A stretch of DNA of 63,361 nt, filler included, from Octopus bimaculoides (lineage: Eukaryota), in assembly GCF_001194135.2 (NCBI RefSeq). It is 8 parts of 7 records of this genome, joined end to end, with 100 filler letters (N's around TTAATTAATTAA, not from the genome) between each part and the next. Parts side by side here need not be neighbours in the genome. Positions count along the whole stretch, not along the records: positions 51,422 to 58,694 come from NW_026332636.1; 7 more parts are not named here. One strand, written 5' to 3'. Within the stretch, counting starts at the first letter, position 1; each line of letters begins with the position of its first letter. This document shows, piece after piece, positions 52,030 through 56,317 of this stretch. Both the position numbers and the translations under genes were made by a program. The notes beneath the pieces are model-generated. The model searched no databases, was not told the DNA's origin, and saw only the letters and a list, made by a program, of their open reading frames with translations.

Positions 52030-52079
52030 CTATTTTAAAAGTACCGAGAAGACCAGTCGTGAGTAACTCCACTGCACCT
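52030..52079 (-). CDS. Terminal coding exon 5 (KVQWSYSRLVFSVLLK*)
   Basis: Strong pyrimidine tract TTTATCCTTTCCTCTTTTTCAG|, phase 1, TAG stop. The five exons total 723 nt (240 aa plus stop). An AATAAA lies on the minus strand at 51593-51588. Confidence 0.65.
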
Positions 52080-52965
52080 CTGAAAAAGAGGAAAGGATAA
52101 ATTTGTTAAAAATTAACTCAATGACCACACGCGTATCTCTATCTATAAATGTATGTACATATATATATATTATTATATTTTATTTCTTCATTGCCCACAA
52201 GGGGCTAAACATAGAGAAGGGGCAAACAAGGACAGACAAACGGATTAAGTCGATTACATCGACCCCAGTGCGTAACTGGTACTTAATTTATCGATCTCCG
52301 AAAGGATGAAAGGCAAAGTTGACCTCGGCGGAATTTGAGCTCAGAACGTAACGGCAGCATTTCGCCCGGCGCGCTAACGTTTCTGCCAGCTCNNNNNNNN
52401 NNNNNNNNNNNNNNNNNNNNNNNNNNNNNNNNNNNNNNNNNNNNNNNNNNNNNNNNNNNNNNNNNNNNNNNNNNNNNNNNNNNNNNNNNNNNNNNNNNNN
52501 NNNNNNNNNNNNNNNNNNNNNNNNNNNNNNNNNNNNNNNNNNNNNNNNNNNNNNNNNNNNNNNNNNNNNNNNNNNNNNNNNNNNNNNNNNNNNNNNNNNN
52601 NNNNNNNNNNCCGCCTTACTTGGTACTTGAGTGTATCAATGAGAGAAGAAAAAAAAAACTAGCGTTCGTTACTTGTTTGTCGATCAACAAATCTCGAAAC
52701 CCCTATGTGTAGTGGGGTGGGCTCATCTGAATTGCACGCAGCTGATTGGATAACACAAAACAACCTTTCATAGCCACACGCAAGAGAACAGCGAAAGTGG
52801 GTATCAGCAACTTTTCTTCATAAATTTCCCGAAGAAGGATTCCTAGCCACGAAATATCGAAATACTAGGTAAGAGTATAAACCATCGACCTGTATTATTG
52901 ATTTTTTTAATTACTTGCATTGTTTTGGATTTGAAAATATTTAAAATATTTATATGTATAAATTC

Positions 52966-53140
52966 GTAGTTTAGCTTAATCGGTCAAAGCATTGTGACAT
53001 TTAATTACGGGGATGTGAGTTCGAGTCCACAGCTAGCCACCTACACTTTTCTCTGCAAAATAGGGATAGTTTATCCTGTTCAGGCTATATTATTAGCATT
53101 GTTCTGCGACTGAGAATTTGAAATCACTTTAAATTTATAT
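52966..53140 (+). mobile_element. tRNA(Lys)-like head plus body shared with 7345-7450 (candidate additional SINE)
   Basis: A-box TAGCTTAATCGGTCAAAGC, loop CATTTAA and B-box GTTCGAGTCC, then CCTACACTTTT..CTGCAAAATAGG...CAGGCTATATTATTAGCATT, which also occurs at 7345-7450. Confidence 0.5.
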
Positions 53141-53248
53141 GTATGAGACAATGCTTTTTGAAAACAACCGATGCTCGTGCGCATTCACACACACACACAG
53201 AATTATATAATCACTTGCATTTAAGTTTAGAAGATATGTTTTACTCAC

Positions 53249-53355
53249 TACCGGATGGATTTTTGCAAGGAATATCGTACTTTTCGACATTTCCACTTCT
53301 TCTTTTGGCTTCTAAGCTCCAGTTGTTATCATACTCGATGGAAAAGAACGGGTAA
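53249..53355 (-). CDS. Coding exon 4 (NYPFFSIEYDNNWSLEAKRRSGNVEKYDIPCKNPSG)
   Basis: Acceptor TTAGTTTCAG|, phase 2 to 1, consensus donor A|GTGAGT. 107 nt, open. Confidence 0.78.
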
Positions 53356-53721
53356 CTGAAACTAATATATTACAATTAATAAATTTAATAAACTTAATCA
53401 TAAAGAAAACATTTACGACTGTATTTACAATAATCAGTTCTGTTTCATTAAATCAATGAGTTCGCCACCATCCCCTGCCGGAGCCTCGTGGAGCTTTAGG
53501 TGTTTTCGTTCAATAAACACTCCCAACGCTCGGTCTGGGAATCGAAACCACGATCCTATGACCGCGAGTCCGCTGCCCTAACCACTGGGCCATTGCGCAA
53601 TGGGATATAAAGTAAATCTGTAAACTTTGCTTTTATATATGCACGGTGAAAGTGTTCCAAAGAACTACTCATGGAACAATTAGTTGAAGATGTTAATTAT
53701 GAATAAGGAATTTGTTTATAC

Positions 53722-53867
53722 TTCTTATTGAAAGTAAATTTCCGTGGTATCCAAGCCGGATGTGTATTAAAAATGATTTTATCTTTCTGGAGCCACGATG
53801 TAGAATTCGTCCCCGTTCCATTAAAAGTCAAATAATGATTAGATCCTATTTTCAACCGAAATTCCTT
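53722..53867 (-). CDS. Coding exon 3 (KEFRLKIGSNHYLTFNGTGTNSTSWLQKDKIIFNTHPAWIPRKFTFNK)
   Basis: Acceptor CTACTTCCAG| (alternative in-frame AG 3 nt downstream), phase 0 to 2, donor AA|GTATAA. 146 nt, open. Confidence 0.75.
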
Positions 53868-54247
53868 CTGGAAGTAGAACGTAAACTTGGATCAGTGACG
53901 AATATGAGAGGGTGAAGGAGGACAGAGTTGTAGGAAGAGAAAGGAGACTAGGATGTGATATAAGGAGGGAGTAGGAGGGCGAGAAGGAGATGGAGAAGAC
54001 AGTGGGGGTGAGGGAAAGAGCGAGACTTTGAGTGCAGGAGAAAAAGACTACAGAAATCAGGAGGAGGAGGAGGAGAAGAAGTAGAAGAAGAAGAAATATC
54101 AACAAAGAATAAACTGAAAGTAGCAGAATAGTCTCTTCAAAAACAATGAAAGGAAATTTTAGCAACAACAGAAAAAGGTAAAAATCAAAGACTTCAAAAG
54201 ATTGTTTATTAAATGCAGGAAACTTTTAAATTTCAAAAATTCATTAC

Positions 54248-54339
54248 CTCTGCCATAGGAAATCTGTCACAGTACAAATAAATAAGACTCCTTGTAAATG
54301 AATCTTTGGTCATCTCAAATATTCTCTGCCAGCTTGTAC
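54248..54339 (-). CDS. Coding exon 2 (GTSWQRIFEMTKDSFTRSLIYLYCDRFPMAE)
   Basis: Acceptor TTCAG|, phase 1 to 0, donor GAG|GTAATG. Open and phase-compatible with exon 1; the junction creates an N-G-T sequon. Confidence 0.8.
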
Positions 54340-54569
54340 CTGAATCAGCAATAAATAGTAATCAATAATTTAGATGTAAGTGTACAGACAAGGATGTTAA
54401 CCCTTAAATGGCAGGAAAGGGTTGCATGAATGTGTTGGAGAAACTGGTAAGAAAACGAAAAATGTCTCTTTTGTTTCTCAGGGTAAGATTTACACTTGCT
54501 TTCACTTTCATTTTGTACGAATACTAAAATAACTGTTTGTCTCAGGCGGAATAAATTTACAAACTCATC

Positions 54570-54720
54570 ATTTATCTTTTTTTCCCCCTCTCGTTCTTCC
54601 TCTTTACTACTACGTATCTCGCTTTACCCCTCTCGTTCTTCCTCTGTTACTACTACGTATCTCTATTTTCCCCCTCGTACTTCCTCTCTTTTCCTCTCGT
54701 TGCTCACCTATTCTTCTACT
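54570..54720. repeat. Pyrimidine-rich minisatellite (~41-bp unit) in an intron of the PAN gene
   Basis: CCCCTCTCGTTCTTCCTCT(G)TTACTACTACGTATCTC repeated about 2.5 times. Confidence 0.8.
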
Positions 54721-55879
54721 TCCTCCCTTTGTTTCTCCCTCTACCACTCTCTCTCTTCCCCTTACACCGGCATGGTCACATGCTTCCGGTCAATAATCCT
54801 TTTCTTCCTTGGCTATCGCCGAGCAAACACGCGAACTCACTTCGTCCCTACTTTCAAGTTCGTGCCTCACAGCGTTCATACACACATGATTTTTCCCGTC
54901 TGGCCGTATAGCCTTTTCTGTTTGTTTTCCTGTCTTGTTTTTTGTCCGCCACTACATTCCTCCATGGCAAGATTTAATTTGCGTATACAAATTTNNNNNN
55001 NNNNNNNNNNNNNNNNNNNNNNNNNNNNNNNNNNNNNNNNNNNNNNNNNNNNNNNNNNNNNNNNNNNNNNNNNNNNNNNNNNNNNNNNNNNNNNNNNNNN
55101 NNNNNNNNNNNNNNNNNNNNNNNNNNNNNNNNNNNNNNNNNNNNNNNNNNNNNNNNNNNNNNNNNNNNNNNNNNNNNNNNNNNNNNNNNNNNNNNNNNNN
55201 NNNNNNNNNNNNNNNNNNNNNNNNNNNNNNNNNNNNNNNNNNNNNNNNNNNNNNNNNNNNNNNNNNNNNNNNNNNNNNNNNNNNNNNNNNNNNNNNNAAA
55301 CACTCACAACGTCCGGTCTGGGAATCGAAACCGCGATCCTATGACCGCGAGTCCGCTGCCCTAACCACAGGAACATATATATATGTTCCTGAACTTTTTT
55401 TTCTCCCTTTTTACTTGTTTCAGTCTGTTGACTGCGACCATGCTGGAGCACCGCCTTTAGTCGAGCAAATCGACCCCAGGACTTATTCTTTGTAAGCCTA
55501 GTACTTATTCTATCGGTCTATTTTGACGAACCGCTAAGTTACGGGGACGTAAACACACCACCATCGAGCGATGTTGGGTGGGACAAACACAGACACACAA
55601 ATACACACACACATATATATACACATATACGACGGGTTTCTTTCAGTTTCTGTCTACCAAATCCACTCACAAGGCTTTGGTCGGCCCGAGGCTATAGCAG
55701 AAGACAGTTGCCCAAGGTGCCACGCAGTAAGGCTGAACCCAGAACCATGTGGTTGGTAAGCAAGCTAGTTACCACACAGCCACTCCTGCGCCTATATATA
55801 CTTGTATATATAAAACAGGGTTATTGATTAAAATATATAAAAATCAGAAAATCATACAAGAAAATGTTGATTTACATAC

Positions 55880-56207
55880 CGTTTGCAGGGAACGAAATAT
55901 ACGAAGAACAATTGCAATCATAATCTTCGATTTCTTTGTTGTACCACAATCGATACATATGACATGTACCTTTACAATAGCTAAAATACTGGCATTCATC
56001 TTGTGACATGCACCAAATCGAACATGCTGTAACAGACACCGTTTCTGCAGTTGATATTCTCTGATCGCTGACACATTTTGATGAAGAGATTTTTCTGAAT
56101 AAACCATTTCTGTACGCTGATTCTCCAGTCATCTGAGTCACGAAGACTACAAGCGTCAAAGCTGGTAGCAACAGGAGAGTCAAATGACACTGAATTGATG
56201 TTTCCAT
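55880..56207 (-). CDS. Coding exon 1 of a secreted PAN/apple-domain protein (signal peptide + PAN-like domain)
   Basis: METSIQCHLTLLLLPALTLVVFVTQMTG is hydrophobic like a signal peptide. It is followed by C45, C62xxxC66, C72, C78 and C82 (ACSIWCMSQDECQYFSYCKGTCHMY), a PAN-type Cys pattern. An acceptor (TTTTTCAG|GA) lies 2 nt before the ATG, and a phase-1 donor G|GTATGT lies at 55880/55879. Confidence 0.85.
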
Positions 56208-56317
56208 TCCTGAAAAATGTCCAAGCATACAAGTATACGTGCATGCATACATGTCTGTCTATTTATCTCTCTCTGTGTGTCTCTTTCTCTATTTGACTGT
56301 CAGTCTCTCTCTCTCTG

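What the first reader, a model, noticed from the sequence alone, without database searches (positions are those of the whole stretch)
52030..56209. Hidden five-exon gene for a secreted PAN-domain glycoprotein
Exons 56207-55880, 54339-54248, 53867-53722, 53355-53249 and 52079-52030 join with consistent phases (1,0,2,1) into one 240-aa ORF. It has a signal peptide, a PAN/apple-like domain, a CxC linker and five N-glycosylation sequons (NCS, NGT twice, NST, NWS). Exons 2-5 are invisible in the ORF track. PAN domains bind carbohydrate or protein, so a lineage-specific lectin-like, immune or secretory-gland protein is plausible (inference).
Basis: partly seen in the sequence, partly recalled or inferred. 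Interest (0 to 1): 0.75.

Follow-up and report, generated by a model that had tools for sequence, protein, structure and literature searches.

The report
Annotated octopus secreted PAN-domain gene
The five exons are a real octopus gene for a small secreted protein with an apple/PAN domain, but the gene is already in public databases as an uncharacterized predicted protein, so it is an ordinary finding apart from its unstudied second domain.

Summary
All have GT..AG borders and join into a 240-aa ORF. The product is 99% identical to NCBI 'uncharacterized protein LOC106880400 [Octopus bimaculoides]' (UniRef: 'Apple domain-containing protein', 242 aa). The only difference is the exon-4 acceptor, which is 53361 and not 53355. 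This restores the family-conserved N-F-S and gives a sixth sequon. Both N gaps lie inside introns 1 and 4. Gap-free O. sinensis loci have the same exon sizes and phases, so the gaps hide no coding sequence. Relatives carry a 13-nt upstream coding exon (MNLK); it is not found in the readable upstream sequence. PAN homology fails Pfam's cut-off (16 bits against 27) but holds at profile level (hhalign 96%, E 2e-9). The module also occurs in bivalve, nemertean, hemichordate, amphioxus and sea-star extracellular proteins. It has no Pfam family of its own and no structural neighbour in the PDB. The gene belongs to an octopus-expanded, fast-evolving family (dN/dS 0.57). Its function is unknown; a secreted glycosylated binding protein is an inference. 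No transcript data were available. The gene is already known, and interest is low to moderate.

The parts
55880..56207 (-). Coding exon 1 (328 nt; residues 1-109 plus 1 nt). ATG at 56207-56205, donor G|gtatgt after 55880. A conserved acceptor tttttcag| ends at 56210, so the exon probably starts at 56209 when spliced to an upstream exon.
   Evidence: exact match to P0001. The acceptor context is identical in O. sinensis L002 and L004.
54248..54339 (-). Coding exon 2 (92 nt), borders cag|GTACAAG ... GCAGAG|gtaatg
   Evidence: The O. sinensis orthologue has the same 92-nt exon.
53722..53867 (-). Coding exon 3 (146 nt). It carries the family-invariant FNGTGTNSTSW motif.
   Evidence: The orthologue has the same 146-nt exon.
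53249..53361 (-). Coding exon 4 (113 nt) with the corrected acceptor tatattag|TTTCAGTTA.
   Evidence: only this start reproduces the 242-aa database protein. The exon is 113 nt with the same context in L002 and L004. NFS is conserved in paralogues.
52030..52079 (-). Coding exon 5 (50 nt, including stop TAG at 52032-52030). It encodes KVQWSYSRLVFSVLLK, the last beta strand of the C-terminal module.
   Evidence: It aligns with the terminal A-D-x-[LVM]-x-[VI]-x-[IL] strand of relatives from other phyla. The model is confident there, with pLDDT about 90-96.
56118..56207 (-). Predicted signal peptide, residues 1-30. The hydrophobic core is LTLLLLPALTLVVFV. A conserved G-x-S fits the -3/-1 cleavage rule, placing cleavage after S30.
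   Evidence: It is the only hydrophobic segment in the protein (19-residue KD above 1.6 only at the N-terminus; mean KD 2.5 for residues 9-24). G-[EAQ]-S is conserved in paralogues. SignalP was not available, so the cleavage site is an inference.
55887..56090 (-). PAN/apple-like domain, about residues 40-107. It has eight cysteines: C45, C62-x3-C66-x5-C72-x5-C78-x3-C82, and C98-N-C100.
   Evidence: Pfam PAN_4 is below threshold. The family profile hits true PAN repeats at E 2e-9 to 1e-4, at the same residues as Pfam PAN_1/PAN_4. hhalign gives 96.2%. The best PDB sequence hits are apple domains of MIC4, EtMIC5 and FXI, none significant.
52033..55886 (-). C-terminal all-beta module, residues 108-242, spliced from the end of exon 1 through exon 5. 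It has four sequons, of which N156GT, N161ST and N189FS are invariant across the six aligned family members.
   Evidence: AF2 with a cross-phylum alignment: pLDDT 88.6, pTM 0.82. Homologous modules in other phyla. No PDB or BFVD neighbour.
54995..55297 (.). Assembly gap inside intron 1
   Evidence: No coding sequence is missing.
52393..52610 (.). Assembly gap inside intron 4
   Evidence: No coding sequence is missing.
58303..58474 (-). Non-coding block about 80% identical to the sequence that follows coding exon 0 by 56-75 nt in two O. sinensis relatives. It marks the probable 5' part of an upstream intron.

Best explanation
This is a real, spliced protein-coding gene of Octopus bimaculoides. 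It is already annotated as LOC106880400, an uncharacterized 'Apple domain-containing protein'.

Its 242-aa product has three parts:
- an N-terminal signal peptide of about 30 residues;
- a cysteine-rich PAN/apple-like domain, about residues 40-107;
- a 135-residue all-beta C-terminal module.

The C-terminal module is a trimmed version of an unnamed extracellular module. The same module occurs alone, after a PAN domain, or inside large EGF/ZP/Sushi/C-type-lectin mosaic proteins in bivalves, a nemertean, a hemichordate, amphioxus and a sea star.

The most likely mode of action is inferred, not shown. The protein would be co-translationally exported, disulfide-bonded and N-glycosylated at some of its six sequons. 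It would then act outside the cell as a soluble binding or recognition protein of about 25 kDa before glycosylation. The PAN domain and the beta module would be its two interaction surfaces.

The gene is one of at least a dozen paralogues in Octopus, several of them probably in tandem arrays, and it evolves fast. This pattern is typical of secreted recognition, defence or reproductive proteins, but no ligand or tissue is known.
For: Shown:
- The exon chain has GT-AG borders and reproduces the database protein exactly.
- Exon sizes and phases are identical in the gap-free O. sinensis orthologous locus, and equivalent in a 50%-identical paralogue.
- The neighbourhood is syntenic: a tail-to-tail paralogue sits in the same place in both species.
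- The orthologues differ at 93 of 729 nt with no indel and no stop. Only 1.15% of neutral simulations keep the ORF open, and 6.3% keep all eight PAN-region cysteines.
- dN/dS is 0.29 in the PAN domain and 0.57 overall.
- PAN homology: profile hits to multi-PAN proteins at the same residues as Pfam PAN_1/PAN_4, and hhalign 96.2%, E 2e-9.
- The Dreissena relative with the same architecture passes the PAN_1 threshold.
- The C-module model is confident, with pLDDT 88.6 and pTM 0.82. It has cross-phylum homologues in extracellular mosaic proteins.
- The only hydrophobic segment is at the N-terminus.

Inferred: secretion, glycosylation and a binding role.
Against: - No transcript, EST or proteomic evidence could be reached. 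Every family member looked up comes from genome annotation.
- No paper mentions the gene or the family.
- Exons are no better conserved at nucleotide level (87%) than the alignable intron ends (78-91%). dN/dS in the C-module is 0.84, so constraint there is weak.
- Pfam PAN models do not reach threshold on this protein.
- Foldseek hits of the full-length model to apple domains are not significant.
- The n-region of the signal peptide (METSIQCH) has no positive charge, unless an unseen upstream exon (MNLK) supplies one.
Confidence: 0.85

Rival explanations
1. The locus is a decaying or never-expressed duplicate in a large gene family. Its intact ORF exists only because it duplicated recently, and the database entry is only an ab initio or homology-based prediction.
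For: No transcript evidence was available here. The C-module has dN/dS 0.84, and exon identity is about the same as intron identity. Several family models in O. sinensis are truncated or chimeric, for example P0002 and P0004. The gene sits on a short, gap-rich unplaced contig.
Against: The ORF is open with no indel in both species despite 12.8% nucleotide divergence, which neutral simulation reproduces in only 1.15% of runs. All eight splice sites and all eight PAN-region cysteines are kept. PAN-domain dN/dS is 0.29.
Confidence: 0.08
2. The reader's 240-aa form, using the acceptor at 53355, is the main or a regulated alternative isoform. It lacks F-S and hence the N189 sequon.
For: TTTCAG|T is a good acceptor consensus, 6 nt downstream of a weak AT-rich ttag| acceptor. 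Both acceptors keep the frame. The two residues lie in a loop between two strands of the model.
Against: NFS is kept in the database model and in all close paralogues. The hexamer TTTCAG is conserved as coding sequence in three loci.
Confidence: 0.15
3. The protein is tethered to the cell surface by a GPI anchor, signalled by the hydrophobic C-terminus LVFSVLLK, and is not freely secreted.
For: The last 10 residues are moderately hydrophobic (mean KD 1.26). Small residues (S, G) precede them.
Against: The hydrophobic run is only about 8 residues, whereas GPI signals usually have 15-20 (textbook knowledge). This segment is the confidently modelled last beta strand of the domain. It aligns with an internal strand of mosaic proteins, where EGF domains follow it.
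Confidence: 0.05

Closest known systems
NCBI gene LOC106880400, Octopus bimaculoides 'uncharacterized protein' (UniRef 'Apple domain-containing protein'), contig LGKD02037755.1 of GCA_001194135.2
   Same: It is the same locus and the same protein.
   Different: The database entry has no functional annotation.
PAN/apple modules (Pfam PAN_1 PF00024, PAN_4 PF14295): plasma prekallikrein and factor XI apple domains, the plasminogen/HGF N-domain, and the apicomplexan micronemal proteins MIC4 and EtMIC5
   Same: The core is C-x3-C-x5-C-x-[FY]-x-[FY]-...-C, with a helix followed by two strands. Profile-level homology is supported. The best PDB sequence hits are MIC4, EtMIC5 and FXI apple domains.
   Different: It is below Pfam thresholds. 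Only about 36 core columns align. It has eight cysteines, including a C-N-C pair, against six in classical apple domains. It is a single copy, not a tandem array. No ligand is known.
Dreissena polymorpha KAH3750350.1 (P0055, 'Apple domain-containing protein') and an unnamed Logan transcript-like protein (P0052)
   Same: They share the two-domain architecture: a PAN domain followed by the same C-module with the F-[ND]-G-x-G-[ST]-N-x-[ST]-x-W-F core.
   Different: The bivalve module is about 50 residues longer. It has an N-terminal insert and a Cys-containing G-C-x2-D-x-G-W...C segment that the octopus proteins lack. Identity is about 20%.
C-module repeats in deuterostome mosaic proteins: amphioxus XP_078667427.1 (EGF + 4 modules + FN3 + ZP), the amphioxus 'HMCN1' models (EGF + C-type lectin), Acanthaster XP_022098360.1 (D8C); and an 'SVEP1-like' Sushi-repeat protein whose organism was not shown
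   Same: They share the module core (profile E 4e-14 to 8e-6; domain hits). All are in an extracellular context.
   Different: There the module is repeated and embedded in proteins of about 1000 aa. Pfam DUF7922 matches part of the module in the amphioxus protein (32 bits, positions 94-125 of 136) but does not match the octopus protein.

Membership tests
PAN/apple superfamily (Pfam PAN_1 PF00024 / PAN_4 PF14295) | Scores at or above the Pfam gathering threshold | tested here: not met
   PAN_4 scores 14.4 bits (240-aa form) and 16.2 bits (242-aa form) against a cut-off of 27. PAN_1 is not reported. Paralogues score 12-22 bits.
PAN/apple superfamily (Pfam PAN_1 PF00024 / PAN_4 PF14295) | Profile-level homology to bona fide PAN repeats | tested here: met
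   The family profile hits the multi-PAN proteins P0033, P0037 and P0040 (E 2e-9, 2e-8, 7e-7 against 1.84 billion proteins). The matched stretches coincide with their Pfam PAN_1/PAN_4 hits. hhalign of the N-domain alignment against PAN repeats gives 96.2%, E 2.2e-9 over 36 columns. Repeat selection by a Cys regex is a minor circularity.
PAN/apple superfamily (Pfam PAN_1 PF00024 / PAN_4 PF14295) | Conserved cysteine core (C-x3-C-x5-C ... C) that fixes a helix on a beta sheet | tested here: met
   C62-x3-C66-x5-C72-x5-C78-x3-C82, flanked by C45 and C98/C100. C72, C82 and C98 are invariant, and the others are conserved in all sequences that cover them except one.
PAN/apple superfamily (Pfam PAN_1 PF00024 / PAN_4 PF14295) | PAN fold (helix packed on a curved antiparallel sheet) | tested here: inconclusive
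   The full-length AF2 model shows helix 59-68 followed by strands 72-78 and 81-86, but pLDDT there is only 59-71. The Foldseek hit to the MIC4 apple pair (4a5v, E 0.2) is not significant.
Classical apple domain (factor XI / prekallikrein type) | Six cysteines paired C1-C6, C2-C5, C3-C4 | not testable with these tools
   Eight cysteines are present. Disulfide connectivity cannot be read from the tools available.
Pfam DUF7922 (PF25538) | Match to the family profile at or above 25 bits | tested here: not met
   There is no DUF7922 hit for the window protein or 9 relatives at E<=1, nor for 10 wider relatives at E<=0.1. Only amphioxus P0030 matches, partially (32.1 bits, profile positions 94-125 of 136), on the stretch homologous to the FNGTGTN core. 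The families may be related, but membership is not shown.
Fibrinogen C-terminal domain (UniRef name of the Mytilus relative P0081) | Match to Pfam Fibrinogen_C | tested here: not met
   No Pfam hit at all for P0081 at E<=0.1. No fibrinogen-related chain appears among the PDB sequence or fold hits of the module.
Secreted N-glycoprotein | Cleavable signal peptide, no other membrane segment, N-x-S/T sequons | tested here: inconclusive
   There is one N-terminal hydrophobic segment and no other. There are six sequons, of which N156, N161 and N189 are invariant across the six aligned family members. SignalP and experimental glycosylation tests were not available.
Lectin (carbohydrate-binding protein) | Demonstrated or motif-predicted sugar-binding site | not testable with these tools
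   No lectin family was hit. Legume-lectin Foldseek hits are not significant (E 0.6-1.1, TM about 0.2).

The most novel reading that the evidence does not exclude
The C-terminal 135 residues may be the minimal form of an ancient bilaterian extracellular module. The module is found in molluscs, a nemertean, a hemichordate, amphioxus and an echinoderm. It has no Pfam family of its own and no detectable structural neighbour in the PDB, so it could be a new fold or a new binding domain. In this reading, octopuses cut the module down, fused it to a PAN domain and expanded it into a fast-evolving family of a dozen or more secreted proteins. Such a family could serve octopus-specific recognition, for example in mucosal or immune defence, reproduction or chemotactile sensing.
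Probability: 0.25. Interest if true: 0.45.

Novelty: already known. Interest (0 to 1): 0.2.

Why it matters
The result shows that the first-stage reader can recover a correct multi-exon eukaryotic gene from raw sequence. The gene itself, however, is already in NCBI and UniProt as a predicted, uncharacterized protein, so little is new at the level of the locus.

Three modest additions come from this work:
- The exon-4 acceptor is corrected by 6 nt.
- A 13-nt 5' coding exon is probably missing from the gap-ridden O. bimaculoides assembly. It would supply a positively charged start (MNLK) to the signal peptide.
- The larger half of the protein is a conserved metazoan extracellular module. It has no name, no literature and no solved structural relative.

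That module, more than this gene, would be worth a structural and binding study.

Tried and rejected
- **Pfam on the product.** Only a sub-threshold PAN_4 hit. Profile methods were needed.
- **Foldseek with the full-length model** (pLDDT 62.8). Nothing significant.
- **Foldseek with the confident C-module model** against PDB and BFVD. Nothing significant; best E 0.29 and 0.018, TM 0.39 or less.
- **PDB sequence search with the cross-phylum C-module profile.** Only chance hits with E of 0.15 or more.
- **Fibrinogen-like reading** of the C-module, suggested by a UniRef name. Rejected: no Pfam or PDB support.
- **GPI-anchor reading** of the C-terminal hydrophobic tail. Rejected, because the tail is the last strand of the domain.
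- **Search for the upstream MNLK exon** in the window and in 10 kb of L001. Not found. The region has four N gaps and an apparent transposon insertion.
- **Literature.** Nothing for the gene IDs, DUF7922, or apple or PAN domains in octopus or molluscs. One search was malformed. The one paper hit was irrelevant.
- **tRNA and Rfam scans** of the piece. Nothing.
- **Inverted repeats I1-I5** from the repeat finder. These are artefacts of the N run flanked by TA repeats.
- **Second profile search of the word-indexed database**. It added bivalve, hemichordate and nemertean relatives but no informative names or Pfam domains.

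
Full report
**What the piece is.** The readable piece (51422-58694) is AT-rich animal DNA with three N gaps: 52393-52610, 54995-55297 and 56353-57153. It also has microsatellites and short interspersed repeats. It corresponds, reversed, to positions 7514-14786 of locus L001, which is part of contig LGKD02037755.1 of the Octopus bimaculoides assembly GCA_001194135.2. It is bounded on both sides by larger gaps.

**Check of the observation.** The phases are 1,0,2,1, and each intron has GT at its start and AG at its end. In the mechanical ORF list only exon 1 lies in a long ORF (126 aa). 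Exon 3 lies in a 52-aa ORF, and exons 2, 4 and 5 in none of 40 aa or more.

A search of about 5.8 billion proteins shows the chain is not a chance construct. The top hit, P0001, is 99% identical over the full length (E 3e-162). NCBI calls it 'uncharacterized protein LOC106880400 [Octopus bimaculoides]' and UniRef 'Apple domain-containing protein'. Six relatives from O. sinensis and O. bimaculoides follow, at 49-83% identity.

**Correction of exon 4.** The database protein has 242 residues. A search over splice-site combinations reproduces P0001 exactly with exons 56207-55880, 54339-54248, 53867-53722, 53361-53249 and 52079-52030. All close paralogues keep N-F-S. A 113-nt exon with the same acceptor context is present in two O. 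sinensis loci. The corrected protein has six sequons. The downstream AG could still serve as a minor alternative acceptor. This cannot be decided without reads.

**The gaps.** The scan program asked that the gaps be tested first. Both gaps inside the finding lie in introns: 54995-55297 in intron 1 and 52393-52610 in intron 4. The frame crosses them through splice junctions, so the estimated gap length does not matter. To check whether an exon could be hidden in a gap, I fetched the O. sinensis orthologous locus L004, which has no N. Its exons are 328, 92, 146, 113 and 50 nt, identical to the window, and the two 243-codon CDSs (242 aa plus stop) align without a single indel. A 50%-identical paralogue, in a locus that also has no N (L002), has exons of 13, 330, 98, 149, 113 and 47 nt with the same phases. 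Nothing is missing in the gaps.

**A probable missing 5' exon.** O. sinensis relatives begin MNLKG-METS. In L002 the MNLK codons plus the first base of the G codon form a 13-nt exon (ATGAATCTTAAAG|gtaagt) 1.8 kb upstream. It is spliced to tttttcag|GAATGGAAAC. In the orthologous locus L004 the same exon (ATGAACCTTAAAG|gtaagt) lies 6.4 kb upstream. The window keeps the acceptor (tttttcag ends at 56210; GA ATG follows), but no such exon occurs in the readable upstream sequence or in 10 kb of L001.

About 80% similarity to the O. sinensis sequence that follows exon 0 by 56-75 nt begins abruptly at window 58474 and runs to 58303. Just upstream of this breakpoint the window has a short GC hairpin (58502-58487) followed by CTAG (58478-58475) and then a T. 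This looks like the 3' end of a Helitron-type insertion; I recognised it from general knowledge and did not test it. Exon 0 of this gene, if it exists, therefore lies beyond the edge of the piece, probably in the 2.5-kb gap. It would add a lysine to the otherwise uncharged n-region of the signal peptide.

**Is the gene alive?** No transcript evidence could be reached. Every family member I could look up comes from genome annotation. The comparative evidence is nevertheless clear:
- The O. bimaculoides and O. sinensis orthologues sit in a syntenic setting, each with a tail-to-tail paralogue about 8 kb downstream.
- They differ at 93 of 729 nt (87.2% identity; 78% at protein level).
- There is no stop and no indel, and all splice sites and all eight PAN-region cysteines are kept.
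- In 20,000 neutral simulations with the same number of substitutions and the same transition/transversion ratio, only 1.15% kept the frame open and 6.3% kept the eight cysteines.
- Nei-Gojobori dN/dS is 0.57 overall, 0.29 in the PAN domain and 0.84 in the C-terminal module.

The gene is under selection to stay coding but evolves fast. Exons are no better conserved at nucleotide level than the alignable intron ends.

**The N-terminal half.** Residues 9-24 (LTLLLLPALTLVVFVT, mean Kyte-Doolittle 2.5) are the only hydrophobic segment. A conserved G-x-S before residue 31 fits the -3/-1 rule. That this is a cleavable signal peptide is an inference. The mature protein would be 212 aa, 25 kDa before glycosylation, with pI 9.0.

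Pfam gives only PAN_4 at 14-16 bits against a cut-off of 27, and paralogues reach 12-22 bits. Profile methods rescue the assignment:
- A six-sequence family profile, searched against 1.84 billion representatives, hits multi-PAN proteins at E 2e-9 to 1e-4 through its positions 54-90. The hits fall on stretches that Pfam calls PAN_1/PAN_4.
- hhalign of the N-domain alignment against PAN repeats cut from such proteins gives 96.2% probability, E 2.2e-9, over the 36-column core.
- The best PDB sequence hits of the family profile are apple domains of Toxoplasma MIC4, Eimeria MIC5 and factor XI. None is significant on its own.

The cysteine pattern is C45 ... C62-x3-C66-x5-C72-x5-C78-x3-C82 ... C98-N-C100.

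**The C-terminal half.** The family profile also hits, through its positions about 120-185, proteins from other phyla:
- Mytilus proteins that carry the module alone (P0049, P0057);
- a Dreissena protein with a PAN domain followed by the module (P0055; PAN_1 22.7 bits, above threshold);
- amphioxus mosaic proteins, with four copies next to EGF, FN3 and ZP domains, or two copies next to EGF and a C-type lectin domain;
- a Sushi-repeat 'SVEP1-like' protein;
- an Acanthaster protein with a D8C domain.

A second search added Mercenaria, Mya, Pinctada, the hemichordate Ptychodera and the nemertean Tubulanus.

The alignment shows a shared core, W-x2-[VI]-F ... [IV]-x-x-V-[KR] ... F-[ND]-G-x-G-[ST]-N-x-[ST]-x-W-F ... 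F-x-I, and a final A-D-x-[LVM]-x-[VI] strand. The octopus proteins lack an N-terminal insert and a Cys-containing G-C-x2-D-x-G-W...C segment that the other phyla have. The final strand is what exon 5 encodes. This validates that short exon and argues against a GPI signal.

With this 22-sequence alignment AlphaFold2 gives a confident all-beta model of about eleven strands (pLDDT 88.6, pTM 0.82). Foldseek finds no significant neighbour in the PDB (best E 0.29, TM 0.29 or less) or in BFVD (best E 0.018, TM 0.39). The profile finds no PDB sequence relative. Pfam has no family for the module. The only trace is a partial DUF7922 hit (32 bits, positions 94-125 of 136) on the homologous core in the amphioxus protein. 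The octopus and bivalve proteins do not match DUF7922. A UniRef label 'Fibrinogen C-terminal domain-containing' on one Mytilus relative has no support from Pfam or PDB.

**Family and distribution.** At least twelve O. bimaculoides loci belong to the family: LOC106880400, 106880398, 106879016, 106867736, 106876620/21/23/24/25, 106874588, 106874575 and 128248537. Many more occur in O. sinensis and O. vulgaris. Several have consecutive gene numbers on one 97.8-Mb chromosome, which suggests tandem arrays. Every compact-form relative I could look up is from Octopus.

**How it probably works.** The following is inference. The protein would be exported through its signal peptide, and its PAN domain locked by disulfides. 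Some of the six sequons would be glycosylated; N156GT and N161ST sit in the most conserved loop of the C-module. The protein would then act as a small soluble extracellular binder with two interaction modules. Fast evolution, tandem duplication and restriction to one genus are typical of recognition, defence or reproductive proteins. Nothing here identifies a ligand or a tissue.

**Verdict.** The gene is already in public databases, so the finding is not new. The only mildly interesting residue is the uncharacterized, structurally orphan C-terminal module.

Noticed in passing
window 56209-56211; L002 4482-4494; L004 1404-1416: O. sinensis relatives have a 13-nt first coding exon (ATGAAYCTTAAAG|gt, encoding MNLK plus 1 nt). 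It is spliced to the acceptor tttttcag|GA that the window also keeps. The exon was not found in the window or in 10 kb upstream in L001, a region that contains four N gaps. The database model, which starts at METS, is therefore probably 5 residues short.
   Followed up: partly
window 58475-58502 (minus strand): A GC hairpin (CCCGG-GCAACG-CCGGG) is followed 8 nt later by CTAG and then a host T. Similarity to the O. sinensis intron sequence starts exactly after it. This looks like the 3' end of a Helitron-type transposon inserted in the upstream intron. It was recognised from general knowledge and not tested against a repeat library.
   Followed up: partly
window 51422-51541, 53479-53598, 55262-55381: Three copies of a 120-nt SINE-like element (95% and 62% identity to the first copy), all in the same orientation as the gene. 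One lies downstream of the gene, one in intron 3 and one in intron 1. The intron-1 copy runs into the gap at 54995-55297. ARAGORN and Rfam do not call them tRNA or any other RNA family.
   Followed up: partly
L001 21811-24178 (outside the window piece); L004 about 22430-22540: A paralogue (LOC106880398, 207 aa, 'Apple domain-containing protein') lies tail-to-tail about 8 kb downstream of the gene. The same arrangement is kept in O. sinensis, which supports orthology of the two loci.
   Followed up: partly
L004 7803-8130: The O. sinensis orthologue model (P0002, LOC118761643, 176 aa) starts at an internal Met. The complete exon 1, with signal peptide and the first half of the PAN domain, is open and 84% identical just upstream. 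The database model therefore looks truncated.
   Followed up: yes
P0004 (LOC118768099, O. sinensis), residues about 147-216: After exon 2 this model diverges into a sequence that resembles a reverse-transcriptase fragment (...FSDLQKFFDTVPRSAIW...). It is probably a chimeric prediction that runs into a retroelement.
   Followed up: no
window 53900-54140 and 54600-54800: Intron 1 carries a purine-rich AG/GA low-complexity tract, and intron 2 a CT-rich tract (cttcttcttctcctcctcc...), as read on the minus strand. They give GC skew up to +/-0.45.
   Followed up: no
window 56252-56208 (minus strand): An in-frame ATG 45 nt upstream of the annotated start extends the ORF to 126 aa (MYACTYTCMLGHFSG-METS...). 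This stretch spans the conserved acceptor and is not conserved as protein, so it is most likely intron.
   Followed up: partly
window 56332-57170: The 'perfect' 415-419-nt inverted repeats reported by the repeat finder are artefacts of the 801-N gap flanked by (TA)n microsatellites.
   Followed up: yes
window 51593 (minus strand): The first AATAAA after the stop codon lies 436 nt downstream, suggesting a 3' UTR of about 450 nt. This was not verified.
   Followed up: no
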